A stretch of DNA of 64,000 nucleotides from IMG/VR virus record IMGVR_UViG_3300046542_000291, positions 62,001-126,000 of that record, one strand, 5' to 3'. Numbering within the stretch: position 1 is the stretch's first letter; each line of letters starts with the position of its first letter. The position numbers and the translations under genes are program-made. Of the stretch, positions 1,600 to 42,203 are shown one piece after another. Below the pieces are notes generated by a model. It did no database searches, was not told the origin of the DNA, and saw only the letters and a program-made list of their open reading frames with translations.

Positions 1600-2022
1600 C
1601 TAAACGATTGGATCATGGCCAACGGGTTCAACCGTGGTCCATGCCAGATCAGTCGGTGTAATGAGTGCCTCACCCAAACGGATGAGAGACTCTGTTCGTA
1701 GGTATTGATGATTCACGATATTGAACCGACCACCCACCGCATGTTCATATTGCTTGAACAAACGATTGATAGCCAGATCCCGATCCGATTGGACCTCGTC
1801 GTCTTTCCGAGGAAGCGGCCGTTCATCTTCAGGCCACAGTACAATAAAGCGGTAGTTGTCTACACCGTATTCCACGTGGTATGAATATTGATGCACGTTG
1901 AAATGTTCGCACTCCAGTTCGGTGTACGATTCGATAGTTGTCGTTGACTCACCAGTTAAAGCATTAAACGAGGCAAGCCTACGTCCCTTGGTTGTATCTA
2001 CGATAACCAGGCTGGCCGACAT
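1600..2022 (-). CDS. hypothetical protein
   Basis: TAATG coupling with upstream gene. Confidence 0.75.
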   Translation of the reverse strand: MSASLVIVDTTKGRRLASFNALTGESTTTIESYTELECEHFNVHQYSYHVEYGVDNYRFIVLWPEDERPLPRKDDEVQSDRDLAINRLFKQYEHAVGGRFNIVNHQYLRTESLIRLGEALITPTDLAWTTVEPVGHDPIV

Positions 2023-2678
2023 TACGCGGCCACTGCTTGGCGGTTGTGCTTGTTGCGGGTACGGATCACTTCACGGGTCAGTTGAATCTGCACTTCTTCC
2101 GAGAAGATCTCCGGGAATGCCCGACTCAACGCCACCGCAGCCATTTCTTCAGCTTGCTGGATGTCGATGTAGTTCGTCAGGATGATCCCGCGGTGATAGA
2201 TGAAACAGTGGTGCCAGCTACCGTTCAGGTACAGGTCACCTTCGAAACCACCATAGGTGAGGGTTTCGTCGTTAGGACCGTCGCGGTACACATCCAGCTG
2301 TACGTTGCGATCCATGTGCATTTGCAGCAGGTCATTGCCCGTACCACCGAAGATGGTCGGACGCTTACGGCCGGTTACCACGTCCTGGATGGAATCCATC
2401 AGGCGAGGCAGTTCAGAAACCAGCTCCTGGAGATCACAAGCTTTGCTCATGGCATCCATGAATCGTTTGGCCAGGAAGTCGTACTCCGGGCCAGTCCACT
2501 GCCGTTGTTCGGCAGCGATGATGTGTACGCCGAACCAAGCATAGCCGTTGGCATGCTTTGCCTTCACACAGAGGTGAGGGATGTTGTCTTCACCCGACTG
2601 ATGATTCGTGGTGTAGTTTTCGATGCGTTTGATGACCAGGGTAATCAAACCCTTTTCGTCGATAATTTGAGTAGACAT
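2022..2678 (-). CDS. hypothetical protein (C-terminal -AVAA)
   Basis: 218-aa ORF, AGGA RBS; weakly similar to 33481..34194. Confidence 0.8.
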   Translation of the reverse strand: MSTQIIDEKGLITLVIKRIENYTTNHQSGEDNIPHLCVKAKHANGYAWFGVHIIAAEQRQWTGPEYDFLAKRFMDAMSKACDLQELVSELPRLMDSIQDVVTGRKRPTIFGGTGNDLLQMHMDRNVQLDVYRDGPNDETLTYGGFEGDLYLNGSWHHCFIYHRGIILTNYIDIQQAEEMAAVALSRAFPEIFSEEVQIQLTREVIRTRNKHNRQAVAA

Positions 2679-2772
2679 GGGTGGTTCCTTTTGAACTTAG
2701 AATCTCTGGGTGGAGTTGAGGCCTCTTTTATCTCAACAAATAATAATCGTACGTAGTTCTTTAAAAGGAAAC

Positions 2773-3441
2773 TCAGTCGCGATTGAGACAGTTGCCGAAC
2801 TTTTGTTCTGCTTGGTATTGAATCTTCTTGGTGATGCTGTCCAACGTACTATCGAAGTTGCACACGAAGTCAATGGTGAAGTTGATCCCTTTGAGGATGT
2901 CTTCGCTATTGTCCGTGATGAACTGCGCCAGCTTCTTGTTGGAATGACCTGTATCAGTTGCTGCGTCTTCCTGCATCCGGGTAAGTAAACGTTGGATTAC
3001 AGTTGAGTCAGCCAGATCGGCAATCCGGGTAGTGGTCAGGAAGTAATCGTTGGTGCCCTTATGACGGACAACAAACAAACGACCAGCCCCTTTACTCGAA
3101 TATTCTTTACGATCTAACAGAAGACTTTCATCGATCAGGTCCCCTTCCAGCTCTGCAGCCGAGAAACGATGTGGTTGAGTAAGCATCCACAGTTCCAGCT
3201 CAGCGCCGCGTTCAATATGTTTAGCCAGCTCCCCGCCAAACTGTTTTGGATGACGCCCCATCACCCGACGAATAACGGTGGTCCAATTGTTCGTTTCCGA
3301 CAACCACACATCGCCAGTGTCCTTGACCACGATAGCGTAGAAGCCACCGGGGATCTTGGTCTTTGGTGCGGTGGTCTGGCCGGTCCAGTTAGCCATGTAA
3401 CGCTTCAACACACCACGTGCAGTGTTATAACGGTTGAACAT
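2773..3441 (-). CDS. protein with two degenerate GIY-YIG-like repeats
   Basis: GGFYAIVVKDTGDVWLSET and GRLFVVRHKGTNDYFLTTT follow the GIY-x-YIG spacing but lack the YIG glycine; directly downstream of an early promoter. Confidence 0.55.
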   Translation of the reverse strand: MFNRYNTARGVLKRYMANWTGQTTAPKTKIPGGFYAIVVKDTGDVWLSETNNWTTVIRRVMGRHPKQFGGELAKHIERGAELELWMLTQPHRFSAAELEGDLIDESLLLDRKEYSSKGAGRLFVVRHKGTNDYFLTTTRIADLADSTVIQRLLTRMQEDAATDTGHSNKKLAQFITDNSEDILKGINFTIDFVCNFDSTLDSITKKIQYQAEQKFGNCLNRD

Positions 3442-3507
3442 GTAATACTCCTAGTTCCTATTGTTCTATTGAATGGTGTAGCTGAGTCTTTCTTTATTTA
3501 CACGATT

Positions 3508-3516
3508 GTAATATAG
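3508..3516 (-). promoter_or_regulatory. phiKZ-type early promoter (CTATATTAC)
   Basis: matches phiKZ virion-RNAP consensus TATATTAC; recurs before genes. Confidence 0.8.
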
Positions 3517-3538
3517 CTTTTAAATCACGTCCAATAAG

Positions 3539-3556
3539 GCCTCCCCGAAGGGAGGC
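3539..3556 (-). terminator. cUUCGg hairpin terminator
   Basis: GCCTCCCTTCGGGGAGGC. Confidence 0.8.
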
Positions 3557-3563
3557 GCTTATG

Positions 3564-3821
3564 TCAGTTCTCCTGGCTAGAATCGATCAGGGGTACACAG
3601 TCCAGCTTGTAGTCGTCGTTAAACCCAGGGATCTCGTCTTCTACGAGCCAGCGCTTATCACTGATCCGCTTAACCGAGGGTTCCTTCAGAGTCGAGATGA
3701 AAGCATCACGCACAGCGTAACACTTATCCATCGACGACACTACCTGTACGGTACGGGAACCGATTTCTGCATTACCCGACCCACCACTGAACACCATCAC
3801 GAACAACGCTTCAACTAACAT
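3564..3821 (-). CDS. small exported 2-Cys protein
   Basis: hydrophobic N-terminus, central Cys and C-terminal CVP; similar to 31586 and 35658. Confidence 0.7.
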   Translation of the reverse strand: MLVEALFVMVFSGGSGNAEIGSRTVQVVSSMDKCYAVRDAFISTLKEPSVKRISDKRWLVEDEIPGFNDDYKLDCVPLIDSSQEN

Positions 3822-4669
3822 GCTTTTTCCTTACGCTCATTGCGAGCAGCCAGATAGAGTTCAACCGCTTCGGCAAACTCTTTCCATTCCTGGACGTATG
3901 CTTCACCGAGGACTTGTGGCAAGACACGCCACAGTTCATCGTTAGATGGGAGACCTGCTTCGGCGCAGGAAATCTTCCAGCTGTTGCGAAGCTTACGCAG
4001 ACCGGACCCATAACGGGCTTTGTGCAAGATCACCGACCCGGACATTTCTGCCCCAGCTACCTTACCTAACTTCAAACCACCACCAGGGCCCAGCGAATGC
4101 CGAGAAGCATAGTTGATCAGATCACGGGTTAATGGACCCAGTTCATCAACGAGCTCTTCAAGGGTACGGGTACTGTCGTAGTGAATACCACCTGGGAAGT
4201 GACCCATCCAGAAAGGAAACATCTCTTTCAGATAGACCGCTTGCGCACGACGATGTTCACGGTGCTCTTCTTCACATTGTCGGGTGACGATTTCCTCGAA
4301 CTCTTTGGTCATGCCATTAAAGAATTGACCAGTGGCGTTCACGCTTTGCCACAGAATCGGCTTATACCGATCCGACAAAGCCACCCGGTCGATTACACGA
4401 CAGACTTCGATCATGTAAGCGGAATGAGGTTCTTCCCATTCTTCCAGAGTAGCCTGGTATTCTTCGAAGTTCTTTTTGATGGCCGGTTTGACGAAGTTGA
4501 TCAACGCCGGGAAGTCATGTGGATCTTGCGACCACTGTGCACCCAGCTTCATCATCTCCATGGGAATCAGATTCCCTTCGTTGGTGATGGTGTACGTCTT
4601 ATGGTCATCCGCTCGGCGAACACACCAAATGTAACCGAGCATCACACCGCGTTCTTTTTCAACTGCCAT
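3815..4669 (-). CDS. hypothetical protein, FPxW..PGG family
   Basis: EMFPFWMGHFPGG motif. Confidence 0.8.
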   Translation of the reverse strand: MAVEKERGVMLGYIWCVRRADDHKTYTITNEGNLIPMEMMKLGAQWSQDPHDFPALINFVKPAIKKNFEEYQATLEEWEEPHSAYMIEVCRVIDRVALSDRYKPILWQSVNATGQFFNGMTKEFEEIVTRQCEEEHREHRRAQAVYLKEMFPFWMGHFPGGIHYDSTRTLEELVDELGPLTRDLINYASRHSLGPGGGLKLGKVAGAEMSGSVILHKARYGSGLRKLRNSWKISCAEAGLPSNDELWRVLPQVLGEAYVQEWKEFAEAVELYLAARNERKEKAC

Positions 4670-4678
4670 GAGTCATCC

Positions 4679-5197
4679 TTACTTGAAAGAGTGACGAACC
4701 GTTTTATCCCCATGCTCACGCACCAGCTTAACTGGATCAATGTGAATAGGTGCCCGGGTGAAGGTGAGGTTCTTACCGACGAGGAACTTCTTGAGGTCAA
4801 TGCGTTCAACGGTAATGTTGCGCACGGTCTCCTGAGTCTTCCATTCGGTTTCGATGTTGTTGTGAGGGTTCATGACCTTAACCCAGCCATCATCCCCACG
4901 GAATGGGAAGGTGTACAGGTAGATGGTCATGTCGAAGAACGCCGACAAGTCGATAGGCTTCCGGCAGTAGATGTAGATGTCGTCGCCAATGGTCGCGTAA
5001 CGCTCACTGTCGAATGCTTTCTCCGTACCGCTACCGATGCCGAGACGAATGGCTTCTTCACGCTCAGAAGTCGCATAGAGCCACTGATTGGATTCGGTAA
5101 CGTCCCACTGAACCAACTTCTTGGTGTGATTGAACCCAGGTTGGATCTCGTTTTGCTTAAACAGAGATCCGTGATACAGCGTTGTTGGTTGTTCCAT
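4679..5197 (-). CDS. putative ADP-ribosyltransferase-fold protein (Arr-like)
   Basis: TLYHGS...LYAT...YLY...EWKT arrangement resembles the H-Y-E/D ART core. Confidence 0.5.
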   Translation of the reverse strand: MEQPTTLYHGSLFKQNEIQPGFNHTKKLVQWDVTESNQWLYATSEREEAIRLGIGSGTEKAFDSERYATIGDDIYIYCRKPIDLSAFFDMTIYLYTFPFRGDDGWVKVMNPHNNIETEWKTQETVRNITVERIDLKKFLVGKNLTFTRAPIHIDPVKLVREHGDKTVRHSFK

Positions 5198-5447
5198 GTT
5201 GGTTTTCCACGAAGAAGAAGTCAGGGTGTTCGACCGAAGCAGCCCACCGGCGAATGGTTTTGGTGCTGATGTTTACAGCTGCCGCTGCCCGAGTGAGGTT
5301 CGGATAAACCACACCACGGATAGAAACGTGTTTCCGGATGGTTGCTTCACGAAGCAGAGAGGCAGCACGAATGTTCGCGATCTGTTCTTTGGTACGGACC
5401 TGACCTTCGTTCGGGTGTTCTTTCGGAAAGCTGTAGTGCGTGTTCAA
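5157..5447 (-). CDS. NUMOD-type DNA-binding protein (homing endonuclease C-terminal module only)
   Basis: RTKEQIANIRAA (NUMOD3-like) plus VSIRGVVYPNLTRAAAAVNISTKTIRRW (NUMOD1-like HTH). Confidence 0.6.
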   Translation of the reverse strand: MNTHYSFPKEHPNEGQVRTKEQIANIRAASLLREATIRKHVSIRGVVYPNLTRAAAAVNISTKTIRRWAASVEHPDFFFVENQHGTTNNAVSRISV

Positions 5448-5890
5448 ATCCCTGTTTCCTTGTCACGGTGTGCTTTAATCAATGGCAAAACTTGCTCATT
5501 GAGTGAAGGGTTGTAACTCCAGTCCTTTCCTGTCAAAGGCTGCTTGTCAAACAGTACCCGCTCTAAGCGGTTGAACTGATCGCAATAAGCTTCCAGGTTA
5601 TGGACCATGTGGGTTTCATTCATGAAGTATTCGATCACTTGATAAGCAGTCCAATACTCCATCGAAGGGACCTGGTTGTCGTGGTCAAAGTTCAACCCCG
5701 CTTCCTCAGCCGCCCGCATCATTGTTTGCGTACGCCGAACCAGCAGATCGATTTGCATCGGTTCCACTGGATAGGCCAAGAACCGACCACCTGGCATCCA
5801 ATGGAGCCAATTCAGGAAGGTGCTATAGAAGTACGTGTGTTGATTGCGCTTCTGTGCTTCCGCCTTCTTCTGTTCCTTAGACTTTGCCAC
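5444..5890 (-). CDS. hypothetical protein, FPxW..PGG family
   Basis: TFLNWLHWMPGG...AAEEAGL. Confidence 0.8.
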   Translation of the reverse strand: MAKSKEQKKAEAQKRNQHTYFYSTFLNWLHWMPGGRFLAYPVEPMQIDLLVRRTQTMMRAAEEAGLNFDHDNQVPSMEYWTAYQVIEYFMNETHMVHNLEAYCDQFNRLERVLFDKQPLTGKDWSYNPSLNEQVLPLIKAHRDKETGI

Positions 5891-6530
5891 CGCGATTCTC
5901 CTTGGCGTCTGCGTAGTACTTGGCTTTGGACCCGGTACCTACCACGCGATAATGATCGCGGATAGGCTCGATCCCTTCCGACACACCAGACATGGGGCGT
6001 GGGATGTGTTCAGATGGATGGGGCATACGGGCGGTGATCTGAGAGAACTTCATCTCACCCATTTCCGCCCGAAGTTTATCCCAGTCGTAGATGACCGAAG
6101 CGTTCGCCAAAGCTGGGCTGTCACTGTAGACATCAACCAACTCCTGAGTGTAAGAACTCAGAAGAACGGTTGGACGTTTATCAATGATACCCTGACGGTA
6201 ACACTCGTTCTCGAAATGGTTGATCAACACCATCCGACGGATAGGGCTGGTGATCTTCGATGGAAACGTACCCACCCCGCGAGAACGCAGCCGATCGAGA
6301 TCGTCTTCAGGCCAAGGTTGACCAGTGATACTCACCTGGGCTTCAATGGCGGCTTGAGCCAACTGTGCGGACAACTCAATGAAAGCTTCACTGAGAATAT
6401 CCCCTTGCTCATACGACAGCAGTGCCCACTGCGGGAACAGGTCAGTCATATAAGCTTTGCGCTTCGCGTTAATATCCCCATCGCGTTTGCGCACTGCTAC
6501 TGTAATGGTCGGCTTCAACTTCTTTTTCAT
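5877..6530 (-). CDS. hypothetical protein, FPxW family
   Basis: TDLFPQWALL...AAIEAQV. Confidence 0.8.
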   Translation of the reverse strand: MKKKLKPTITVAVRKRDGDINAKRKAYMTDLFPQWALLSYEQGDILSEAFIELSAQLAQAAIEAQVSITGQPWPEDDLDRLRSRGVGTFPSKITSPIRRMVLINHFENECYRQGIIDKRPTVLLSSYTQELVDVYSDSPALANASVIYDWDKLRAEMGEMKFSQITARMPHPSEHIPRPMSGVSEGIEPIRDHYRVVGTGSKAKYYADAKENRGGKV

Positions 6531-6556
6531 GATTGCATCCAGCTTGTTATTAGTGG

Positions 6557-8628: not shown

Positions 8629-8630
8629 GT

Positions 8631-12999: not shown

Positions 13000-13269
13000 T
13001 TACGCAGCCGCTTGTCCCACGGCCATCAGCATTGCGAGCTGGCTGTTTTTGGGTATTTCCAGCTCAGTCAGTTCTTCACCGGTTTTGCACAGTGTAAGTG
13101 TTTCCAGGTTTCCCCGGAGATCACAGGTGAACTCCACTGCGCCCTCCGGGTGTAACCCGAACGAGCGCCAGTTGCTATTATCGGAGATGTCAAAGGTAAA
13201 GAGTCGCTCCTTACCGAGAAATTCCGTTACCCAAGCTTCTCCGCGTTTAATCAATCTGACGCTTGCCAT
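13000..13269 (-). CDS. hypothetical protein (C-terminal -QAAA)
   Basis: start moved to MASVR. Confidence 0.75.
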   Translation of the reverse strand: MASVRLIKRGEAWVTEFLGKERLFTFDISDNSNWRSFGLHPEGAVEFTCDLRGNLETLTLCKTGEELTELEIPKNSQLAMLMAVGQAAA

Positions 13270-17534: not shown

Positions 17535-17882
17535 CTACGTGTTAATGGATTCAGCGAATGCTTTACCCAGACTACATAAGGTGATATCGGTATCGCTGAA
17601 GTCAGCGTTGATCATGACTTCACCACGGAGCATTACAATCTCGCGTGCGTCTATGACATCGAATACCGTTTGAGCACCTTCCTTCAATCCATCTGCATAA
17701 GCGGCTTTGGCCTCGTCACTTCCACGATCGGTGGATTCTACGGCCGCTTTATCAGTAAGGGAATCGACGACAGCCCCGAGCAACCGGGTTTGCTGTTCAA
17801 GGGACTCTTTCTTCTGTTCTTCTTCCAAGTCATTCAAGATCTTGATAGCCTCTTGAAGACCGTCTGACATCATGAGTGACAT
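17535..17882 (-). CDS. 'IN[ST]-tail' family protein
   Basis: ends SLGKAFAESINT. Confidence 0.85.
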   Translation of the reverse strand: MSLMMSDGLQEAIKILNDLEEEQKKESLEQQTRLLGAVVDSLTDKAAVESTDRGSDEAKAAYADGLKEGAQTVFDVIDAREIVMLRGEVMINADFSDTDITLCSLGKAFAESINT

Positions 17883-17899
17883 GATAATACCGTCCTTCT

Positions 17900-18253
17900 T
17901 TACGTGTTGATTGATTCAGCGAAAGCCTTCGCCAGGCTAATGCGGTGATGATCGTCAGTCGTGTAATCGATGTTGATCAGAGCCTCGCCCTTACCCAGAA
18001 TGATGTCCTGCTCGTCAATGACTTCCAGAGTTTTGATAACCCCTGCACGCAGACCCTCATTATAAGCTATCGCTTCGTATTGGTTAATGAAACCGCCGTT
18101 GTCGTGTTTCCCATCGACGAGTACATTTGACAGTGAACCCAGGAACGTTGTTTTCGCTGCTCCTGCTACAACCATCTGCTCACGCTCTACCCGTTCGAGG
18201 ATGTCCACGGCACGTTGAAGGTCAGCTTTGTTGATTGGGCGCATTAGGCTCAT
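17900..18253 (-). CDS. 'IN[ST]-tail' family protein
   Basis: ends SLAKAFAESINT; start moved to MSLMR (GGAG RBS). Confidence 0.85.
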   Translation of the reverse strand: MSLMRPINKADLQRAVDILERVEREQMVVAGAAKTTFLGSLSNVLVDGKHDNGGFINQYEAIAYNEGLRAGVIKTLEVIDEQDIILGKGEALINIDYTTDDHHRISLAKAFAESINT

Positions 18254-18382
18254 GGTGTTCGTCTCCATAGACAGGTAGGCAATACCTACACTTCTTTTTG
18301 TCGGAGCACACCCCAATGATTTCCATCAAGGGTGCACTTCTATTGAGACGGCTGTCGAGTTTATTCGGCAACCACGCCAGAC

Positions 18383-18643
18383 TCAGCTATTGATTGCGTC
18401 AGCGAACGCTTTGCTGAGTTTGACGCTCTCGTTGATTACACCAGCCGGGGAGACCAGTTGCAGGCCGACGGTGTCGATGACTTCCAGTACATGGTTGACA
18501 CCGAACAGGCTACCAGCAACAAAAGCCGCTTTGTCGTGGTCGCCGTTGTTGTCTGCAGCCGATTCAGTTACAACGCCAACAGCGGCGATGAAAGCAGCTT
18601 GATCGACAGCCTGGTCTTCGGTAGTGGTGATTACGTCGTTCAT
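18383..18643 (-). CDS. 'IN[ST]-tail' family protein
   Basis: ends KLSKAFADAINS; AGGAG RBS. Confidence 0.85.
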   Translation of the reverse strand: MNDVITTTEDQAVDQAAFIAAVGVVTESAADNNGDHDKAAFVAGSLFGVNHVLEVIDTVGLQLVSPAGVINESVKLSKAFADAINS

Positions 18644-18708
18644 GCGGTAAAACTCCTGGGTACTACTGCTAATGGCCTCTCTCGGTAAAATCCGGAGAGT
18701 GATTTGTT

Positions 18709-19194
18709 TTACGTATTGATTGCGTCAGCCCAGCATTGGCCGAGACTGATGAGCGTTTCGTCGTCGTTGTAATCCACGTTGATTGGGGTTTCCCCATCCA
18801 TCGTAGTTACAATGAGTTTTCGTTTGTCGAGTGCGTTGAACACTACACCCGCGCCTTCTTTCAGACCGGCTTTGAAGGCGACGTACGCTTCCGGGTTGCC
18901 TTGAAAGAACGTCCCGGTATTGCCTTTTTCTTGAAGATCTTCGATGACCTGCGTCATCAACCGCGTTCGTTCAACACCTGTGGTTTCGTTGTAAGCTGTT
19001 TCAAGATCACGGAGCTTCTGCTCTATGCGCTTATGCTCATCCGATTTTTCAACAACAACCGTCATCGTTACCTCCGGCTCTGGTTGTATCACGCCTTGCA
19101 TGAGTTGAATGTTAGCCCAGGTTGCCCCGAGCAGTTCTGCGATTGGAAAAGGGGCCGGGGTAGCCGGAACCAAATCCGAACAACTGTAGTTCAT
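18709..19194 (-). CDS. 'IN[ST]-tail' family protein
   Basis: ends SLGQCWADAINT; ATGA-coupled start at 19194. Confidence 0.85.
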   Translation of the reverse strand: MNYSCSDLVPATPAPFPIAELLGATWANIQLMQGVIQPEPEVTMTVVVEKSDEHKRIEQKLRDLETAYNETTGVERTRLMTQVIEDLQEKGNTGTFFQGNPEAYVAFKAGLKEGAGVVFNALDKRKLIVTTMDGETPINVDYNDDETLISLGQCWADAINT

Positions 19195-19682
19195 GTATTG
19201 ATGTCCTCCCACAGATTACTAATTATCCCCCAAACCGGATTATGGTAATCATCGACCAAGTCAAGGTGACCCTGTAGGATTGTTACTGTGTCCGAGATAG
19301 ATGTCTGAATACTTTCCTCGACCAGTGGCATAACCATGGCGTGGAGTTCTTTAGGCAACTGATCCTGGACAAATGTCGCTTGTGACTTGAAGAGGTCTTG
19401 TAACTCATCCCGTATAGGTCCTAAGACCGGTGACACACTTTCGTATGCATACCACGGGGCACTGCCGTCGGACGGGGGAGGTTCTACGCCTAGTTTTTCA
19501 TAGGCCACCCGAATTGCCGGGTCAAGCCACTCATCTGGTTCGAGGTCCTCATCGGGCTCTACCATTACGTGCTCATCCCACGGCAAATCTTCATCACCAA
19601 CGTCGTCTTCAAAGTCCCGACGAAAGTCCTCCTCGTCATCCATGGCATTGCCAAGCATGATCCCATCCAACGACATGTTCAT
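19191..19682 (-). CDS. 'IN[ST]-tail' family protein with acidic N-terminus
   Basis: ends IISNLWEDINT; D/E-rich N-terminus. Confidence 0.85.
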   Translation of the reverse strand: MNMSLDGIMLGNAMDDEEDFRRDFEDDVGDEDLPWDEHVMVEPDEDLEPDEWLDPAIRVAYEKLGVEPPPSDGSAPWYAYESVSPVLGPIRDELQDLFKSQATFVQDQLPKELHAMVMPLVEESIQTSISDTVTILQGHLDLVDDYHNPVWGIISNLWEDINT

Positions 19683-19984
19683 GAATTAATCGCCTCTACA
19701 AACGCGTCTGCGATGTCTTCGAGGAATGGGAAGCAACCCATATCCCCAGGCGATATAAACGCCAGCTGACAGCTGGCCTCTATCGTACTGCAGGTTCCGA
19801 TTACAGCAGAGTGGATGGCGTCTTGTGCACACTCCTTCACCCATTTGGTAGCATCATCGTTGATGTCCCAAAGAGCGCAGATGCGGTCATTGTTGATGAA
19901 CTGTTCCACCGCAGCAGATGCTACGCCTTGCAGTTCACTAACCAAGTCTTTCTTGCCTTGGGCGAGAATTTCATTTTCCATCAT
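19679..19984 (-). CDS. 'IN[ST]-tail' family protein
   Basis: ends DIADAFVEAINS. Confidence 0.85.
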   Translation of the reverse strand: MMENEILAQGKKDLVSELQGVASAAVEQFINNDRICALWDINDDATKWVKECAQDAIHSAVIGTCSTIEASCQLAFISPGDMGCFPFLEDIADAFVEAINS

Positions 19985-28868: not shown

Positions 28869-29291
28869 TTATGCAGCGGTCCAGCGTTTATACGTGCTGA
28901 CTGGGTAAGCATCGCCAGCCCAGGTCATGTCGCTTTGCATCTTTTCAACCAGCGCACAGATACGCGTGGCCACCATACGCTTGCTGATTGGACGGATACG
29001 ATCTGGATTGTCCAGAACTTCCATCCCAGTAACAGTAGTGCGGGCCATTACGTGGAAACGGAAAGTCTCCAGCTCAGCACTTGCCGTGCTTTTAATGGTG
29101 ATGTCGACGTGCTTCAAGTTATCGGTGTCTTTGAACACCGACTGAACCACAAACGTCAATACCGTTTTGTTGATGGTGAAGGTTGTGTTGAACAGCTGAT
29201 GTTTCTCCAACGCTGCGGAATAGCCTTCACGCAGCAGCGCCTCTAAAGCAGTCATTGCAATGGAGGTGAACATCTTGTTAGTAAACGACAT
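28869..29291 (-). CDS. hypothetical protein, 'L..GY' family (C-terminal -TAA)
   Basis: ALEALLREGYSAALEKHQLFNT similar to 31822 and 29322. Confidence 0.8.
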   Translation of the reverse strand: MSFTNKMFTSIAMTALEALLREGYSAALEKHQLFNTTFTINKTVLTFVVQSVFKDTDNLKHVDITIKSTASAELETFRFHVMARTTVTGMEVLDNPDRIRPISKRMVATRICALVEKMQSDMTWAGDAYPVSTYKRWTAA

Positions 29292-35657: not shown

Positions 35658-35906
35658 TTATTGCAAAGGTTTGCAGGTTACAGTGATTTTTGCCATACGG
35701 CTCGACAGTGCGCCACCATCGACTCTCGATTCAACGTAGTCTTTGGTTTCTTTGACGAGGTAAGGCTTCATGCCGTATGTCTCTACGACTTGTTCAATTG
35801 CGGCTGGACACGTGTTGGCATCTGACAGTTCTGTGACTGTTGGTGCACCACCAGGTCCTGCGCCTGTATTGAACGCAAATGCGATAACAAGTAACGCTTT
35901 CATCAT
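35658..35906 (-). CDS. small exported 2-Cys protein
   Basis: hydrophobic N-terminus, TCPAA...TCKP. Confidence 0.7.
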   Translation of the reverse strand: MMKALLVIAFAFNTGAGPGGAPTVTELSDANTCPAAIEQVVETYGMKPYLVKETKDYVESRVDGGALSSRMAKITVTCKPLQ

Positions 35907-37186
35907 TACCCCTTAACGCAGAGAACCTGCTTCAGCGTGTGGACGATCTCGACGAGTTCAGCCTGAGCTGCCATCACGTCTTCGATGTTCTTGTACGCCT
36001 TCGGGGTCTCATCGAGCACACCTTCATCTTTACGGCATTCAACACCAGCCGTATCGCGGATGTGATCTTCGATGGTGAAGTTACGGTTAGCCGCTTTACG
36101 CGACATCACACGACCAGCACCATGCGAACAGGAGCAGAACGACTCACGGTTGCCCTTACCACGAACGATGAACGACTTCGCACCCATCGACCCTGGGATA
36201 ATACCCAGAGTACCTTCCTCGGCGTTTACGGCACCTTTACGGGTAACCAGAACGTTCTCACCGAAGTGACGTTCCTGGGACACGTAGTTGTGGTGGCAAT
36301 TGATTGCCGCCATGTCGGTGTCGATTGGCAGGTTCAGGGTTTTGTGGATCGCCCCCAGAACAGCCTTCATCATGAGCGTACGATTCAGTGCTGCGAAACG
36401 CTGTGCCCACGATACCGCCTGCAGGTAGTCGTCGTAGTACTTGGTACCGTGTGGCAGGTAAGCCAGATCTTGGTCTGGTAGATGGATAAAGAAACGACCC
36501 ATCTCTTCCTTTGCCTTGTTGATGAAGTACTGACCGATCGCATTCCCGATACCACGGGAACCAGAGTGCAGCATTACCCACACACGCTGTTCCTCGTCCA
36601 AGCACAGCTCAACGAAGTGGTTACCGGTACCGAGAGTACCCACATGGTTCCACGCCCGTTGTGCAGCCTTGGTGAGCTTCGGGTGTTTCTCAACGATTTG
36701 GTTCAGTTGCGTTCGCAACTTCTCCGCTTCAGCAGCGATCATGATGTCCTTGTTATCGAACACAGTCACCTTACCGAAAGCACCACGGTCGTTTGGACCA
36801 CCGTTGTCAGTACGGCCATGTGGTACTACCGCTTCGATAGCTGCCCGCAGATGGCCGAGGCTATCTGGCAGTTGGTCTGCACCGAACGTCAAGCGACGAG
36901 CGGCCATTCCGCACCCGATATCGACCCCCACCGCAGCGGGAATGATTGCACCTTTAGTAGCAATGACGCTACCGACAGTGGCACCCAACCCGAAGTGTAC
37001 GTCCGGCATTACTGCAACGTGCGAATGGATGAACGGCAACGACGCCAGGTTCTTCAACTGCTTGACTGCGGTCTCTTCGACTGGAACCCCCACGGTCCAG
37101 CCTTTAATCGGCTTCGAACCCGGTTCAGGTTCGCCACCAATGATTTCGAAAGACTTATCTTGCTGCTGGGATTTCTTTTGTTTCAT
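35906..37186 (-). CDS. rtcB: RtcB RNA ligase (3'-phosphate/5'-OH)
   Basis: MPDVH, GVDIGCG, GTLGTGNHF, HSGSRG, HHNY, SHGAGR, DETPKAYK. Confidence 0.97.
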   Translation of the reverse strand: MKQKKSQQQDKSFEIIGGEPEPGSKPIKGWTVGVPVEETAVKQLKNLASLPFIHSHVAVMPDVHFGLGATVGSVIATKGAIIPAAVGVDIGCGMAARRLTFGADQLPDSLGHLRAAIEAVVPHGRTDNGGPNDRGAFGKVTVFDNKDIMIAAEAEKLRTQLNQIVEKHPKLTKAAQRAWNHVGTLGTGNHFVELCLDEEQRVWVMLHSGSRGIGNAIGQYFINKAKEEMGRFFIHLPDQDLAYLPHGTKYYDDYLQAVSWAQRFAALNRTLMMKAVLGAIHKTLNLPIDTDMAAINCHHNYVSQERHFGENVLVTRKGAVNAEEGTLGIIPGSMGAKSFIVRGKGNRESFCSCSHGAGRVMSRKAANRNFTIEDHIRDTAGVECRKDEGVLDETPKAYKNIEDVMAAQAELVEIVHTLKQVLCVKG

Positions 37187-37218
37187 AACTACCTCACGCG
37201 GATGGAAAGAGGGTGTAG

Positions 37219-37470
37219 CTAAACGTTGTTTATTTCTTTGATGTAAGCAAAGGCCTCATCACGGTAGAAGACATGACCATTATGGTTACCCATGTCCGCT
37301 ACCGCTTCATTGAGTTCCCTTTCGAACCACCAGTACCACTCCGGCCCCTTTGGTTGATAACGGGCACACCACTTAGCGTATTCCAGCAAGTTGCATGCAC
37401 AGTTACCACGAGGGACCTGGGGCTCTTTAGGTGGAGTCTTACCAAAGACTCGGCGTAACCATTCGACCAT
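37219..37470 (-). CDS. hypothetical protein
   Basis: TAATG-coupled. Confidence 0.7.
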   Translation of the reverse strand: MVEWLRRVFGKTPPKEPQVPRGNCACNLLEYAKWCARYQPKGPEWYWWFERELNEAVADMGNHNGHVFYRDEAFAYIKEINNV

Positions 37471-37850
37471 TACGCCACTGCCGCCTCACCAAACGTCAGC
37501 TCTTTGTAAAGCTGCGGTTTCGGAGGCATCAGGGTGATACCACTGCAAGCACTGAAATGGGCCTGAATGGTTTCGTTGCGTTCCTGGCGGATGTAATCGT
37601 AGTTGAACAGGAACCCGTCCAACTCAACTTGATTAATCGCCTTGGTCGGATCGATGTAACTGGTTTCCCACGGACCAACCTCATGGTTAACCGAATGGAA
37701 CAGCACACCGGCTGTTTTCTCAGCCAGGGATTGCATCCCGGTCATGACCTTGGAATAGAAGCGTTCGATCAACAAGCGTTGCTGCTTAGGAGAACTGGCA
37801 CTCCAGATAGCCGAGCCATAATGTTCTACAACCTGTTCTGTACGTTCCAT
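37470..37850 (-). CDS. hypothetical protein
   Basis: GAGGT RBS. Confidence 0.75.
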   Translation of the reverse strand: MERTEQVVEHYGSAIWSASSPKQQRLLIERFYSKVMTGMQSLAEKTAGVLFHSVNHEVGPWETSYIDPTKAINQVELDGFLFNYDYIRQERNETIQAHFSACSGITLMPPKPQLYKELTFGEAAVA

Positions 37851-37865
37851 CGGATACCTCTTGAG

Positions 37866-39182
37866 TTATGCCGCTTTGAGAAGGGGCAATGTGGGGATGG
37901 ATGCAATAAAGGCATCCGGGTCACGGCGATGTTCAAGGAACAACGCTTGCAGGTCACAGCCCGCTATGTCCTCGAAACACCCACTGAATTCGTAGGTATG
38001 CTCCGGGAACACAACATGGATGTACTCGCGTACTTCTACATCGGTCAAGTAACCGATTTCCATCAGGTGGTCCACTCGACCTTTACGAACTACCGCATCA
38101 TCGATCTTGTCGATGTGGTTGGTAGTCATGAAGATCACCGTGCCGTTCAGCGAAACCACCCCGTCCAACACGTTGAGCACTTTGCTCAGGGTCAACCGGG
38201 AGAACTCTTCGTTCAGGGCTTCGAAGATGTTTGCTTCCGCAACTTTCTTCTTGGCTGGCGCCGCCGGTAAAGCACCGAGTGTTTCCACCGGTTCAACCTT
38301 TGGCTTCTTCGGTGTACGCGCCTTGAAGGCAGCCGAACTGTCGAAGTCTTCGATCAACACCACCGAGTTCGGGGGCAGGTGACTGAGGGCTTTCTCGAAT
38401 GACGTATCGTCCATCGAGTTGATGTTGATGGTGCAGATGTTCTTGCCGAAGTGGGCAGCCAGTGCCTTGATGATACTGGTCTTGCCTGTACCTGGCTTAC
38501 CGTGGATAACAAACGTCGACTTGTAAGCCATGCCACGTTCGTTGTACCACTCTTCACTTTCGTAGAACTGTTCCAGCTCGAAGATCAACTTATCCTTCGT
38601 AGCTTTGTTCATCGCTACCGTCTTGAGAGGACGCTTCTTGATCTCACACAGGTACTGCCAGCCTTGATCACCGGTGTACGTATAGATGCGGGACTTCAGT
38701 GAGTTCTCTTTCGGCATGAACGAACTGACCAGGTCCTTCAACACTTGTTGATTACGACCCCAGGTGAAAATCGTGACGCGTTCTTTCTCGTTGGTTGACC
38801 CTTGACTGTTCAATGCTTCTTTCTTGAACCAGTACAGGCGTCTCTTATAAACGAAGAAGTGTGTGCCGAAACCAGGGCCTATAATTGTCCGGCTGTTGGG
38901 TGACTCCAAGCTGATGTTCCGCGAGTAGCGTGACCAGGGTTGTTCACAGAACCACTGCATGAAGGACGTGAAGTGAACACGGTCTTCTGACCAAGCGGTG
39001 GCGTTGTTGAACGTCAGGCTGGTCATGCATTGTTTCAGTGTGGCCGAGTACACCGTTTTGGGCACCTGCCGCAGTATCGCGTACAGGAACCCCATTAGGC
39101 CAGCAAGGACGATGCCTGCTGCCCAGGGGGAAACCTTGTTGAATGTCAGGTATTGCTGCTGAAGCCAATCAATAAATTCCAT
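37866..39182 (-). CDS. BCS1-like membrane-anchored AAA+ ATPase
   Basis: N-terminal TM, PGFGTHFFVY (BCS1_N-like), WYNERG, Walker A GKPGTGKT, Walker B VLIEDFD, LNVLDG, MTTNH, RKGRVD. Confidence 0.9.
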   Translation of the reverse strand: MEFIDWLQQQYLTFNKVSPWAAGIVLAGLMGFLYAILRQVPKTVYSATLKQCMTSLTFNNATAWSEDRVHFTSFMQWFCEQPWSRYSRNISLESPNSRTIIGPGFGTHFFVYKRRLYWFKKEALNSQGSTNEKERVTIFTWGRNQQVLKDLVSSFMPKENSLKSRIYTYTGDQGWQYLCEIKKRPLKTVAMNKATKDKLIFELEQFYESEEWYNERGMAYKSTFVIHGKPGTGKTSIIKALAAHFGKNICTININSMDDTSFEKALSHLPPNSVVLIEDFDSSAAFKARTPKKPKVEPVETLGALPAAPAKKKVAEANIFEALNEEFSRLTLSKVLNVLDGVVSLNGTVIFMTTNHIDKIDDAVVRKGRVDHLMEIGYLTDVEVREYIHVVFPEHTYEFSGCFEDIAGCDLQALFLEHRRDPDAFIASIPTLPLLKAA

Positions 39183-39250
39183 GTCACATAGCTCTCTGTG
39201 TTAAACCGGCATAGATCGCCCCTTCCCTGGAGCGGTTCTATGTTGGGGTG

Positions 39251-41032
39251 TTATGCAGCTTCGCGCAGGGTTGCACGAACTTCTTCGAAGGTCACTTCGT
39301 TCGGGAACGTGCCGTCTTTGTAGATCGGACGCAGTTCACCCGAGTGAGTGTCGAGGTCAGCGATTTCGAACTTCTGCTCTTGGAGCAGCTCAAAGTCACC
39401 GGCTTCGTTCTTCACAACCTTCAGGAAGCCCTTGGCCGACTTCTTGTTGGTTTCGCCTTCGGTCTTCGGCGCCTTGAACAGCTCAACGAACACGTCGTCC
39501 ACTTGAACGGCGGTAGCCTTGATGGCGTAGCCGAAGGTGTCACGAGTGTTGTGCTGATAGGTGTACGAACCGATACCCAGAACCCAGTTGCACGAAGCGA
39601 AGCCTTTCTTCATCAGGCGACGCATGATTTCCTGGGTACGTTCCACAGTGATCGAATCACCGTAGATCAGGCCAACACGTTCGTGCAGCACTTTGAAGCC
39701 CTTGTCGGTCATGGTGCCACCGAAAGTGTTCCACAGGCATTCCACCGCACCGATCTGTTCGGCGTTCAGTTCTACCGGAGCCCACAGGTAGCCCAGAGCC
39801 GTGTAGTACTTCTCGGCGTCTTCAGCACTGATCGGATTTTCGTAGCGGGTTGCTTTGTACGTCATGCCGTTCAACAGAACGTACTCGACGTCTTTCGCTT
39901 TGCCGTTGTTGACCAGTTCGCTGAATTCCAGCGAGTTGTGAACTTCCACACCGCAGATGACTTCAACAGGATCACCGGAATCCGGACGGAACACCACTTT
40001 GGCCAGGCCGTTGGCGTCTGGTTGACGAGCCAGGATTTCTTCCTTCAGGGAAGGGGCAACAATGGTCAGGACACCCCAGAAGTCGAAGCTGTCGCAGACC
40101 AGGCTGATGATGCCAGTAGGACACTTGACGGTAATGGCATCCAGGATGAACTGACGCTCGGCCAGCAGTTGCGCTTTGCCGTATGCATCGGGATCGAGGT
40201 CACCACCAGTCAGGCCTTTTTCCAGCAGCCACTTGGTCATGTTGTACAGGATGTTCGAAGTAGCAACGGCGTGTTCGGTAGCACGCACCGATACAGCCAG
40301 GAACTCGACGTCGCTGTTGGCGAAGTACATGTCTTCGGCGTAGTCGATGGCCGGCAGGGTATCGGTACCCACGAAGCTGGTCAGGTGACCGGCGCCAGTA
40401 CGAGCAGCATCTTCAGGACCGGACAGGCCACGGAAGGCGAAGTCATGCCCTTGCAACGCAACGAAGTCACGAGGCGAACCAGTCAGGTCAGCGAAGTGTT
40501 CCAGGATGCGACGGTATTCGTAAGCGATGGTGGCGTTGCAGACCATTTTCCAGATCAGCGACGACATCAGGGTTTCCAGGTAGTTCACTACCCAGAAGAA
40601 TTCCGGTACGGTGTTGTAGATCACGTAGCCCGGAACGTTCATGTTCAGGCGAGAGCCTTCCGGTACCGACAGGATGGTAACCGGTAAGTAACCCAGGTCA
40701 TGCAGTGCTGCCATGGCTTCGATGTCAACCATACCTTCACCGAGGTAGTTCTTCATGCGGCGAGCGTAGCGACGGATCACTTGCTCTTTCGGCTTGCTGA
40801 AGAACGAATCGTGCCACAGGCCGTGAACTTCACGCATCACGCCTTGGATACCGAACCAGACGACTTTGCTATCCCAGAGGTAGGACTGGGACTTGCTGCC
40901 CTTGAACAGACGGTCTGCACGTGGAGTGCCGTTACCGTAGGCGAAGTTGGTGCCGTTCGGGTACAGAGGGCCGTGACCCATTTTGTAACCGTCTGCTGCA
41001 GTCGGGCCAAACAGTTTGAAAGAAGTGCTCAT
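39251..41032 (-). CDS. NAMPT-family phosphoribosyltransferase (probable NARP1 Namat)
   Basis: ADGYKMGH, HDFAFRG, GTDT, ATEH, RPDSGDP, IYGDSIT, GIGSYTYQ, TRDT, KKSAKG; start moved to MSTSF. Confidence 0.9.
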   Translation of the reverse strand: MSTSFKLFGPTAADGYKMGHGPLYPNGTNFAYGNGTPRADRLFKGSKSQSYLWDSKVVWFGIQGVMREVHGLWHDSFFSKPKEQVIRRYARRMKNYLGEGMVDIEAMAALHDLGYLPVTILSVPEGSRLNMNVPGYVIYNTVPEFFWVVNYLETLMSSLIWKMVCNATIAYEYRRILEHFADLTGSPRDFVALQGHDFAFRGLSGPEDAARTGAGHLTSFVGTDTLPAIDYAEDMYFANSDVEFLAVSVRATEHAVATSNILYNMTKWLLEKGLTGGDLDPDAYGKAQLLAERQFILDAITVKCPTGIISLVCDSFDFWGVLTIVAPSLKEEILARQPDANGLAKVVFRPDSGDPVEVICGVEVHNSLEFSELVNNGKAKDVEYVLLNGMTYKATRYENPISAEDAEKYYTALGYLWAPVELNAEQIGAVECLWNTFGGTMTDKGFKVLHERVGLIYGDSITVERTQEIMRRLMKKGFASCNWVLGIGSYTYQHNTRDTFGYAIKATAVQVDDVFVELFKAPKTEGETNKKSAKGFLKVVKNEAGDFELLQEQKFEIADLDTHSGELRPIYKDGTFPNEVTFEEVRATLREAA

Positions 41033-41045
41033 TACTTTGTTTTCC

Positions 41046-41921
41046 TTACGCATTGATCCAGGTGAGTTTGTTATCGACAACACCGTCTGGGCGAGTACTG
41101 CCCTGTGCTGTCGGATGGAACGAGTTGGTGGTGTAGACGTGGTCGTACTTTTCAGTAACCAGGTCGAAACCGTACGAGAAGATCCCGTGCGTTACCAACA
41201 GTTCCAATCGTGCTGGATTATGCTTGCGGATTTCTTCAGCCAGTTGGATGAAGGTCCGTCCACCATCACAGATGTCGTCACAGACCAGCAGTCGTTTGCC
41301 AGTTACATCGGCATCGAACTTGGTCTTGGTGATTTCCATCGTTTCCAGGTCACGCTCTTTAGTAGCCGTGATGTAACCAGCGCAGCCCAGGTGAGCAGCC
41401 AACGCTTTCACTTTCTTGACAGCCCCTGCATCAGGAGCCACCAGCCAGGTATCGTGCAGTTCGTTTGCCGTAGCATCCAACATGTGCACGATGTCAGCCT
41501 GGGTCTTGACGATCACGCGGTTGATCAACGCCGGCGTAGTGTCGCTGTGCGGGTCCAAAATGGTCACACTGACGAACTCACAGAGGTTGATCAACTTCGC
41601 TGCTACCGCAATACCCAACGACTCCCCGGGGTTACACACGCGGTCCTGCCGGGCGTAAGGGACATAAGGGATATATGCGCTTACCGGTACGTCGGGACGA
41701 ATGCGACGGATCGCATCGGTAACGTGCAGTAAAGCGAGGAAGTCAGTTGGGGTACGGAGGTTGGCCATGACTTGAATGTCCATGCAACCGCGGATTTTGT
41801 TGTGGAACTCTTTCGGAATAAGTGGGTTAACTTCCCCACCTTTGAACGTGCTCACGTCAACGATAGTCTGCGCCACTCCCCAGTGGTCGCCATTGCCGCG
41901 TCGGATACTTAAACGAATCAT
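41046..41921 (-). CDS. ribose-phosphate pyrophosphokinase family (probable NARP1 Adps)
   Basis: FKGGE, PYVPYARQDR, DPHS, APDAGA, DDICDGGRTF, VTHGIFS. Confidence 0.9.
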   Translation of the reverse strand: MIRLSIRRGNGDHWGVAQTIVDVSTFKGGEVNPLIPKEFHNKIRGCMDIQVMANLRTPTDFLALLHVTDAIRRIRPDVPVSAYIPYVPYARQDRVCNPGESLGIAVAAKLINLCEFVSVTILDPHSDTTPALINRVIVKTQADIVHMLDATANELHDTWLVAPDAGAVKKVKALAAHLGCAGYITATKERDLETMEITKTKFDADVTGKRLLVCDDICDGGRTFIQLAEEIRKHNPARLELLVTHGIFSYGFDLVTEKYDHVYTTNSFHPTAQGSTRPDGVVDNKLTWINA

Positions 41922-41972
41922 TACGGTAGCCTTTTGCTATGGTCTTGTATTATTCGGGACGCAGGTATTCCT

Positions 41973-42203
41973 TTACGCTGCGACCTGTAACAATGCTGGG
42001 TTCCATGGAATACGGCCTTCGAACATCTGTTCACGTTCAGAGAGTTCGGCCACAGGTTTACGGCCTTCCAGCTTACGCCAGGCCTTATCAAGGTCAGCCA
42101 TGTGCTTGTCCAGTTCTTTGGTTTTCTTGAGTGTTGCCAACTCATAACCACCCGAACCAGGCATCATCATGGTGCCGTCTTTATAGCGGATTGGCTTAGC
42201 CAT
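41973..42203 (-). CDS. small hypothetical protein (C-terminal -QVAA)
   Basis: TGATG-coupled ORF. Confidence 0.7.
   Translation of the reverse strand: MAKPIRYKDGTMMMPGSGGYELATLKKTKELDKHMADLDKAWRKLEGRKPVAELSEREQMFEGRIPWNPALLQVAA

What the first reader, a model, noticed from the sequence alone, without database searches (positions are those of the whole stretch)
2022..42203. Six phage proteins end in an ssrA-like -AA degron
C-termini: 2022..2678 RQAVAA, 13000..13269 VGQAAA, 28869..29291 KRWTAA, BCS1-like ATPase PLLKAA, NAMPT-like TLREAA, 41973..42203 LLQVAA (plus EAAVA at 37470). With about 120 genes and Ala near 8%, under one would be expected by chance (rough estimate). In five of six the Ala codons are not part of the next gene's RBS. 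ClpX recognises C-terminal Ala-Ala (established). Together with the phage SspB homolog this suggests programmed ClpXP turnover of selected early proteins, including the NAD-salvage enzyme.
Basis: partly seen in the sequence, partly recalled or inferred. Interest (0 to 1): 0.65.

Follow-up and report, generated by a model that had tools for sequence, protein, structure and literature searches.

The report
Ala-Ala protein ends in jumbo phage
Six genes in this stretch of a rhizosphere jumbo phage really do end in Ala-Ala, about three to four times more often than composition predicts, but the tails are mostly not kept in related phages and also sit on capsid and replication proteins, so a planned ClpXP destruction programme is possible for a few proteins at most and remains untested.

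Summary
All six named genes end in Ala-Ala at the stated coordinates, and the RBS remark is correct. The 310-kb genome has 11-12 such ends against 2.7 expected. Five related jumbo phages show the same 2-4x excess. phiKZ, T4 and pf16 show none. E. coli and Pseudomonas samples show only 1.6-1.8x.

The phage SspB homologue is also real. It has an SspB fold and a conserved C-terminal ClpX-binding (XB)-like motif.

The proposed programme of ClpXP turnover is not supported by comparison:
- Five of the six tails have orthologues, and only NAMPT keeps -AA, in two distant Ralstonia phages. Its closest homologues do not.
- In this phage and its relatives, -AA ends also sit on UvsX, DNA polymerase, an RNA polymerase subunit, a major head protein and a tail-fibre-like protein.
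- The excess does not track the presence of a phage SspB.
- SspB binds a different tag segment, and no shared upstream motif was noticed by eye.
- The NAMPT -AA is modelled as the end of a well-ordered helix.
- In E. coli, a terminal Ala-Ala is necessary but not sufficient for ClpXP.

The most likely reading is a lineage-wide preference for Ala at the last two positions. The BCS1-like ATPase (LLKAA) and the 76-aa protein (LQVAA) are the best candidate degrons; NAMPT (LREAA) has favourable residues but a helical end.

The parts
2022..2678 (-). 218-aa protein of unknown function (phrog_15052) ending ...NRQAVAA. Its stop overlaps the next gene's ATG (TAATG).
   Evidence: Orthologues in D6, Phabio and Viktualia end REA, EVK and KVR.
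13000..13269 (-). 89-aa protein (phrog_14045) ending ...VGQAAA.
   Evidence: Homologues in D6 and Phabio end GARC and YVGG.
28869..29291 (-). 140-aa orphan protein ending ...KRWTAA.
   Evidence: No homologue in five relatives. Thr at -3 is an unfavourable position-3 residue in the E. coli screen (PMC10862746).
37866..39182 (-). BCS1-like AAA+ ATPase (438 aa) ending ...IPTLPLLKAA. The last 8 residues lie beyond the conserved F-I-x-S-I-P end of the domain.
   Evidence: Pfam BCS1_N + AAA; phrog_7485. D6 and RP12 orthologues end PAV and TTV. 13 of its 120 nearest clusters end AA, with at least 9 state changes on the tree.
39251..41032 (-). Nicotinamide phosphoribosyltransferase (593 aa; the longest ORF runs to 41083) ending ...TLREAA.
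   Evidence: Pfam NAPRTase. Tails of 120 homologue clusters: 20 AA, 55 ending in Ala; at least 11 state changes. AF2 model pLDDT 94.6, C-terminal helix 582-592 of 593.
41973..42203 (-). 76-aa protein (phrog_6391) ending ...PALLQVAA.
   Evidence: The D6 orthologue (61% identity) ends ...QSTLPS.
37470..37850 (-).
   Evidence: No family hit.
41046..41921 (-). Ribose-phosphate pyrophosphokinase, upstream partner of NAMPT. It ends ...TWINA.
   Evidence: phrog_619. The same PRS-NAMPT pairing is annotated in Phabio, Viktualia, RP12 and D6.
49960..50727 (-). SspB-family ClpX adaptor homologue (255 aa). It has an N-terminal SspB substrate-binding domain (residues 1-120), a long low-confidence linker, and the C-terminal XB-like motif PPKLTLLQGGKQ.
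   Evidence: PDB phmmer E 2e-4. Family profile against full-length E. coli SspB, E 3.5e-32. 28 of 36 family members hit Pfam SspB. Foldseek top 13 hits are all SspB, TM 0.75-0.83. Motif alignment A2.

Best explanation
The six Ala-Ala ends are real. They belong to a lineage-wide habit of this group of chimallin-encoding jumbo phages (this phage, D6, Phabio, Viktualia, RP12, FLC4-3B): Ala is favoured at the last residue, also at the second-last in four of the six genomes, and the two positions are coupled.

The tails come and go quickly during evolution and land on every class of protein, including capsid, tail-fibre-like, polymerase and recombinase proteins. They are therefore mostly tolerated or weakly favoured C-terminal composition, not a coordinated degradation programme for chosen early proteins. 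Many simply finish a C-terminal helix, as in the NAMPT model.

It is inferred, not shown, that a minority could be weak ssrA-like ClpXP degrons. The best candidates have an extension beyond the folded domain and Leu upstream: the BCS1-like ATPase (LLKAA) and the 76-aa protein (LQVAA). NAMPT (LREAA) has favourable upstream residues, but its end is modelled as helical.

Separately, the phage encodes a genuine SspB-type adaptor that should dock on host ClpX through its XB-like tail. The phage has no ClpP or ClpX-type ATPase of its own. The adaptor's cargo is unknown, and nothing ties it to the -AA proteins.
For: - Enrichment of 2-4x in each of six related genomes, robust to the gene-calling threshold. 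Ala excess is confined to positions -1 and -2. Coupling of the two positions: odds ratio 2.8, p = 5e-8.
- Bacteria that have ClpXP already show Ala at -1 at 1.3-1.5x, and AA is the commonest or near-commonest terminal dipeptide (E. coli 8/509, P. asturiensis 7/332). AA ends are therefore not purged.
- High turnover: 44 different protein families carry at least one AA tail across the six genomes, mostly 1 of N orthologues. There are at least 11 and at least 9 state changes on the NAMPT and BCS1-like trees.
- AA tails occur on core and late proteins. AA-tailed proteins are longer than average (median 259 vs 167 aa, p = 7e-4).
- The NAMPT tail is helical and confidently modelled.
- In E. coli, Ala-Ala is necessary but not sufficient, and upstream residues matter: consensus [LFYW][LAR]LAA (PMC10862746).
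- SspB homology and the XB motif. No phage ClpP or AAA_2.
Against: - The excess in the phage group (pooled 3.0x; coupling odds ratio 2.8) is larger than in E. coli (1.6x; odds ratio 1.5) or Pseudomonas (1.8x), and it is absent from phiKZ, T4 and pf16. Something beyond a universal bias acts here.
- AA is far commoner among homologues of NAMPT (20/120) and the BCS1-like ATPase (13/120) than the roughly 2% background, and it arose or was lost many times. That is what recurrent selection for the dipeptide would also produce.
- Several tails have the favourable upstream Leu.
- No mechanism for a purely compositional preference was demonstrated.
Confidence: 0.55

Rival explanations
1. The -AA ends are built-in ssrA-like degrons, so that selected cytoplasmic phage proteins (NAMPT, BCS1-like ATPase, small proteins) are cleared by host ClpXP on a schedule, possibly tuned by the phage SspB homologue. 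Proteins imported into the phage nucleus or assembled into virions escape.
For: - Terminal Ala-Ala is the key ClpX determinant (PMC10862746, PMC7652416).
- The excess exceeds that in controls, and positions -1 and -2 are coupled.
- AA is recurrent in the NAMPT and BCS1-like families.
- Favourable upstream residues in LLKAA, LREAA and LQVAA.
- The BCS1-like tail is a variable extension beyond the conserved domain end.
- The phage carries a real ClpX adaptor and a chimallin homologue that would shield nuclear proteins.
Against: - Tails are not conserved in orthologues for four of the five testable window proteins, nor in the nearest NAMPT homologues.
- AA also sits on a major head protein, a tail-fibre-like protein, a polymerase and a recombinase.
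- The excess is uncoupled from SspB presence.
- SspB recognises a different tag segment, and no common upstream motif was noticed by eye.
- The NAMPT end is helical.
- AA alone is insufficient in E. coli, and TAA- or polar-preceded tails are poor.
- No expression-timing data exist.
Confidence: 0.22
2. Chance plus selective noticing. One dipeptide out of 400 stood out in one window, and the rest follows from Ala being common at C-termini.
For: - With position-specific Ala frequencies, the genome-wide excess is only 11 vs 5.0 (p = 0.014).
- Bonferroni-corrected significance in this genome alone is about 0.05.
- Decoy ORFs in this genome also show 11 vs 5.6.
Against: - AA is the top, or among the top, terminal dipeptide independently in D6, RP12, FLC4-3B and Viktualia.
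- Pooled, 51 vs 16.8; still about 43 after collapsing shared orthologous tails.
- Pooled clade decoys show only 1.4x.
Confidence: 0.08
3. The Ala-Ala end is selected for a function other than ClpXP targeting. Examples are translation-termination context, protection of the C-terminus, or a docking tail in the AAA+ ATPase.
For: - The C-terminal residues are known to affect termination and expression in bacteria (PMC7246954).
- The excess is specific to the last two residues.
- AAA+ ATPases often use C-terminal tails for docking (established knowledge, not tested here).
Against: - No difference in stop-codon use between AA-tailed and other genes.
- BCS1-like tails after the conserved FIxSIP vary from 0 to 17 residues with no conserved sequence, which argues against a docking motif.
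- No direct evidence for any of these functions.
Confidence: 0.15

Closest known systems
ssrA tag and ssrA-like C-terminal ClpX degrons (C-motif 1 of Flynn et al. 2003; DEtox screen, PMC10862746)
   Same: Free C-terminal Ala-Ala. Some tails have Leu, Arg or Ala upstream, as in the experimental consensus [LFYW][LAR]LAA.
   Different: - None has Leu at -3. One has Thr at -3, which is disfavoured.
- The tails are encoded, not added by tmRNA.
- They are mostly not conserved.
- At least the NAMPT end is modelled as structured.
- No degradation data exist.
SspB adaptor of E. coli and H. influenzae (Pfam PF04386; PDB 1OU9, 1OX9, 8ET3)
   Same: The N-terminal substrate-binding fold, a disordered linker, and a C-terminal L-x-V/L-I/V-K/Q motif like the ClpX-binding LRVVK.
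   Different: - 255 aa rather than 165.
- The XB-like motif is followed by GGK(Q).
- The linker carries a conserved PLLDFG motif and one copy of a tail-fibre-type repeat.
- The Pfam score of this member alone is below the cut-off (15.5 vs 27 bits).
- The cargo is unknown.
Phage SspB homologues already described: pf16 gp18 (PMC5587285) and Erwinia phage RAY gp039, a cytoplasmic 'SspB-like ClpXP adaptor' (bioRxiv 10.1101/2023.02.24.529968); PHROG 8945
   Same: The same family. The same group of nucleus-forming jumbo phages in the case of RAY. phiKZ, D6, Phabio, Viktualia and Psa21 also have one.
   Different: None of those reports links the adaptor to Ala-Ala-ended phage proteins, and neither does my evidence.
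C-terminal composition bias of bacterial proteomes (Weber et al. 2020, PMC7246954)
   Same: A position-specific bias restricted to the last residues, with same-residue pairs over-represented.
   Different: That survey reports Lys and Arg enriched and hydrophobic residues disfavoured at -1. Here Ala is the commonest last residue, and Ala-Ala the commonest terminal pair.

Membership tests
ssrA-like C-terminal ClpX degron | Free C-terminal Ala-Ala | tested here: met
   Six window genes, and 11-12 genome-wide.
ssrA-like C-terminal ClpX degron | Favourable upstream residues (Leu at -3; [LFYW] at -5, [LAR] at -4; no Gly, Pro, His or short polar residue at -3), per PMC10862746 | tested here: inconclusive
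   - LLKAA, LREAA and LQVAA have favourable -5/-4 residues but K, E or V at -3.
- QAVAA and GQAAA are mediocre.
- RWTAA has the disfavoured Thr at -3.
- Clade-wide -3 residues: K9 L8 Q7 V7 A6 E5.
ssrA-like C-terminal ClpX degron | Accessible, unstructured C-terminal tail | tested here: inconclusive
   - In the NAMPT model, residues 582-592 of 593 are helical at high pLDDT.
- The BCS1-like tail is an 8-residue Pro-containing extension past the conserved domain end.
- The other four proteins were not modelled.
ssrA-like C-terminal ClpX degron | ClpX/ClpP-dependent degradation that is lost on AA-to-DD change | not testable with these tools
   Needs half-life measurements in wild-type and clpX hosts.
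ssrA-like C-terminal ClpX degron | Conservation of the tail among orthologues, as expected for a functional signal | tested here: not met
   - Four of the five window proteins with orthologues have no -AA in any orthologue.
- NAMPT keeps -AA only in FLC4-3B and RP12, not in D6, Phabio, Viktualia or its 30 nearest clusters.
SspB adaptor family (PF04386) | SspB substrate-binding domain fold | tested here: met
   AF2 pLDDT of at least 91 over residues 11-120. The top 13 Foldseek hits are all SspB, TM 0.75-0.83. Profile against PDB SspB, E 3.5e-32.
SspB adaptor family (PF04386) | C-terminal ClpX-binding (XB) peptide of LRVVK type after a flexible linker | tested here: met
   LTLLQGGKQ aligns with LRVVK, LRVIK and LTVVK of short family members, and with LTVIKGGKK and LRLIQGGKA of phage members (A2). 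The linker has pLDDT of about 50.
SspB adaptor family (PF04386) | Pfam gathering threshold reached by this protein itself | tested here: not met
   15.5 bits against a cut-off of 27. Membership rests on the profile, fold and motif evidence instead.
SspB adaptor family (PF04386) | Physical binding to the ClpX N-domain and stimulation of substrate degradation | not testable with these tools
   Needs pull-down and degradation assays.
Nicotinamide phosphoribosyltransferase (NAPRTase family, PF04095) | Family domain above threshold, and a PRS partner gene | tested here: met
   94 bits against a cut-off of 20.8. 70% identity to Phabio NAMPT. PRS lies upstream.
BCS1-like AAA+ ATPase | BCS1_N domain followed by an AAA domain | tested here: met
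   PF08740 at 59 bits and PF00004 at 59.9 bits.

The most novel reading that the evidence does not exclude
This group of nucleus-forming jumbo phages uses encoded ssrA-like Ala-Ala ends as a cheap timer or compartment filter. Proteins that stay in the cytoplasm, such as the NAD-salvage NAMPT and the neighbouring BCS1-like ATPase, would be cleared by host ClpXP. Proteins that are imported into the phage nucleus or assembled would be protected. The phage SspB homologue would retune ClpX during infection.
Probability: 0.15. Interest if true: 0.65.

Novelty: new member of a known kind. Interest (0 to 1): 0.3.

Why it matters
If even a few of these tails are working degrons, they would be the first case of a lytic jumbo phage scheduling its own auxiliary enzymes through host ClpXP. 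That would include a NAD-restoring counter-defence enzyme. It would also give a simple handle (AA to DD) for altering their lifetime.

As the evidence stands, the main value is cautionary. A terminal Ala-Ala is common in this phage group and in ClpXP-bearing bacteria, so it cannot be read as a degron from sequence alone.

Two results are solid but modest:
- A reproducible, lineage-specific C-terminal Ala-Ala bias that is still unexplained.
- A clear sequence and fold case that the jumbo-phage 'SspB-like' proteins keep the ClpX-docking motif.

Tried and rejected
- **Nucleotide motif:** GCNGCNTAA is not over-represented outside gene ends (9 vs 4.5 expected on both strands, all six coding-strand hits at gene ends). 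I rejected a regulatory DNA motif.
- **Codon duplication or slippage:** the two Ala codons differ in all six genes. Rejected.
- **RBS overlap:** only one of the six overlaps the next start. Rejected as a cause.
- **Closer relatives:** a viral-contig scan with the BCS1-like ATPase found nothing. The word search with the SspB-like protein found only itself, so I used the exhaustive representative search.
- **Complex prediction:** the job pairing the SspB-like C-terminal 42 residues with two copies of the P. aeruginosa ClpX N-domain gave no verdict. I use it neither for nor against binding.
- **PDB sequence searches:** none for the 580-aa and 487-aa AA-tailed proteins.
- **RNA data:** no RNA sequencing run holds this phage. 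The only full holder is a rhizosphere metagenome that is probably its source, so 'early' timing could not be checked and read laying was not used.
- **ssrA-like 'AANDVY' in the SspB linker:** not conserved in homologues, so treated as coincidence.
- **Clustering in the window:** six of the 12 AA genes lie in a window holding about 30% of the genes. By my rough estimate, not computed in a call, this is not significant (about p = 0.13).
Full report
**What the window is.** The window is bases 62,001-126,000 of a single 310,396-bp virus record with direct terminal repeats. GC content is 51%. Nearly all window genes lie on the minus strand.

The only run that holds the whole stretch is a rhizosphere metagenome, which is probably its source. 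No RNA run holds it.

The nearest sequenced phages, by reciprocal best hits:
- Pseudomonas phage D6: 176 hits, mean 52% identity.
- Phabio and Viktualia: about 145-149 hits, 44%.
- Ralstonia phages RP12 and FLC4-3B: about 77 hits, 32%.

The genome encodes a 627-aa protein 43% identical to the phiKZ protein that matches solved chimallin/PhuN structures. This is therefore a nucleus-forming type of jumbo phage.

**The observation.** I called genes with a codon-usage model trained on the genome's own long ORFs. C-termini depend only on frame and stop codon, so start-site errors do not matter.

Five of the six named genes are confident calls ending in AA. The sixth, 13000-13269, scored low but matches phrog_14045 at E 1e-22, so all six stand.

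The six stop contexts are GCC GCG TAA, GCT GCG TAA, GCT GCA TAA, GCG GCA TAA, GCT GCA TAA and GCA GCG TAA. Only the first overlaps the next start codon. On the coding strand, GCNGCNTAA occurs nowhere else in the window.

**Statistics.** Genome-wide, 11 of 360 confident genes end in AA (12 of 379 at a laxer threshold, 11 of 278 at a stricter one).
- The internal AA dipeptide frequency predicts 2.7 (p = 1e-4). AA is the most enriched of all terminal dipeptides.
- Ala is itself enriched at -1 (12.2%) and -2 (11.4%) against 8.2% overall. A positional null therefore predicts 5.0 (p = 0.014).

The same pipeline on five relatives gives 9, 12, 7, 7 and 5 AA ends against 2.5-3.0 expected. Pooled with this genome, that is 51 against 16.8. 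Ala excess is limited to positions -1 and -2, and the two positions are coupled (odds ratio 2.8, p = 5e-8).

Controls:

| Genome | AA ends observed | Expected |
|---|---|---|
| phiKZ | 0 | 1.6 |
| T4 | 1 | 1.2 |
| pf16 | 2 | 1.65 |
| E. coli (580 kb) | 8 | 5.0 |
| Pseudomonas asturiensis (400 kb) | 7 | 3.9 |

In the Pseudomonas sample, AA is also the commonest terminal dipeptide. In the two bacteria, independent Ala preferences at each position explain the count. In the phage group about a two-fold excess remains. Non-coding decoy ORFs show only 1.4x pooled.

The signal is therefore real and lineage-specific, but moderate. ClpXP-bearing bacteria do not avoid AA ends.

**Conservation.**
- Orthologues of 2022-2678 end REA, EVK and KVR.
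- Those of 13000-13269 end GARC and YVGG.
- Those of the BCS1-like ATPase end PAV and TTV.
- That of 41973-42203 ends LPS.
- 28869-29291 has no relative.
- NAMPT ends KKAA in FLC4-3B and LLAA in RP12, but VEA, AKV and ALA in D6, Phabio and Viktualia.

Among the 120 nearest NAMPT clusters from metagenomes, the 30 closest (67-74% identity) never end in AA. Overall, 20 end in AA and 55 end in Ala. For the BCS1-like ATPase, 13 of 120 clusters end in AA, but not the three nearest.

I built trees without the last 12 residues. On them, the AA state changes at least 11 times for NAMPT and at least 9 times for the BCS1-like ATPase.

Across the six genomes, 44 different families carry an AA tail, usually in one member only. 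The tail is labile. Its high frequency in these two families is the best remaining hint of selection.

**Who carries the tails.** In this genome the AA set also includes:
- a UvsX-like recombinase (AA kept in the four Pseudomonas phages),
- a DNA polymerase,
- an RNA polymerase beta-like subunit,
- a 580-aa conserved protein.

In relatives it includes the Viktualia major head protein (...VDALAA), a FLC4-3B virion/tail-fibre-like protein (...LPLAA) and an SbcC-like nuclease subunit (...ELAA). AA-tailed proteins are longer than average. This does not fit 'selected early proteins'.

**Tail quality.** A randomised-tag screen in E. coli found terminal Ala-Ala necessary but not sufficient. Its consensus was [LFYW][LAR]LAA, and Gly, Pro, His or short polar residues at -3 were poor (PMC10862746).
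- By those rules LLKAA, LREAA and LQVAA are plausible but not strong.
- QAVAA and GQAAA are mediocre.
- RWTAA is poor.

The NAMPT model (pLDDT 94.6) places the AA at the end of a confidently modelled C-terminal helix. The BCS1-like tail is an 8-residue extension beyond a conserved FIxSIP motif. Homologues carry 0-17 unrelated residues after that motif. That makes it the more credible accessible tail.

**The SspB homologue.** The protein at 49960-50727 scores below the Pfam SspB threshold. Other evidence places it in the family:
- It aligns with E. coli SspB residues 6-106.
- Its best match in the E. coli chromosome is the sspB locus.
- An exhaustive search gave 35 relatives of 135-318 aa, and 28 of the 36 family members (query included) hit Pfam SspB.
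- Their profile matches full-length SspB at E 3.5e-32.
- The model's first 120 residues superpose on SspB structures.

The family ends in L-[TRS]-[VL]-[IV]-[KQ]. Short members have LRVVK, and jumbo-phage members have LTLIQGGKK-like ends. This is the position and pattern of the ClpX-binding peptide.

The phage has no ClpP or ClpX-type ATPase, so the partner would be host ClpX.

Phage SspB homologues have already been reported: pf16 gp18, RAY gp039 and PHROG 8945.

Nothing links the homologue to the AA tails:
- SspB binds the upstream part of the ssrA tag (established knowledge).
- No common upstream motif was noticed by eye in the AA-tailed proteins; no motif search was run.
- RP12 has no detectable SspB homologue and the highest AA excess.
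- phiKZ has a homologue and no AA tail.

The most likely account (about 55%) is a lineage-wide, fast-turning-over preference for Ala-Ala at protein ends that is largely tolerated. The BCS1-like ATPase and the 76-aa protein are the best candidates for ClpXP sensitivity, and NAMPT less so.

Noticed in passing
window 17535-19984 (-): Six tandem paralogous ORFs (86-167 aa, no PHROG hit) all end in ...AF(A/V)(E/D)(S/A)IN(T/S). Ile and Asn are invariant. This C-terminal motif is far better conserved than -AA. Its function is unknown.
   Followed up: partly
window 49960-50727 (-), residues 193-215 of the SspB homologue: The linker holds one copy of a roughly 25-aa unit (SAYDLARAKGFTGTEEDFL). That unit is repeated up to 19 times in very large phage tail-fibre or collagen-like proteins, including this genome's 1456-aa protein at genome 199381-203751. 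It is modelled as a small helical hairpin at pLDDT 80-89.
   Followed up: partly
window 49960-50727 (-), residues about 220-240 and 148-156: A PLLDFG motif just upstream of the XB-like tail is conserved in the long jumbo-phage SspB forms. An ssrA-tag-like 'AANDVY' in the linker is not conserved in homologues.
   Followed up: partly
window 39251-41921 (-) and 35906-37186 (-): There is a ribose-phosphate pyrophosphokinase + NAMPT pair, as in Phabio, Viktualia, RP12 and D6. An RtcB RNA ligase nearby is 57-66% identical to bacterial RtcB and about 75% identical at the DNA level to those of D6 and RP12. The longest NAMPT ORF (GTG at 41083) overlaps the PRS end; the database protein starts 17 codons later.
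   Followed up: partly
genome 308426-310309 (outside the window): A chimallin/PhuN homologue, 43% identical to the phiKZ protein, which marks a nucleus-forming phage.
   Followed up: yes
genome 49269-54153 (outside the window): Four tRNA genes (Tyr, Asp, Asn, Trp). There are no tRNA genes in the window and no tmRNA gene in the genome.
   Followed up: no
genome 173877-174146 and 244667-244999 (outside the window): Two small AA-ended genes are followed directly by GC-rich hairpin plus T-run terminator-like sequences. The hairpins do not include the Ala codons.
   Followed up: no
relatives: L034:6914-9154 (Viktualia): The major head protein of Viktualia ends in ...ALAA, the closest match to an ssrA-type end anywhere in the six genomes. 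Its orthologues end LGA, KAP and VKA.
   Followed up: partly
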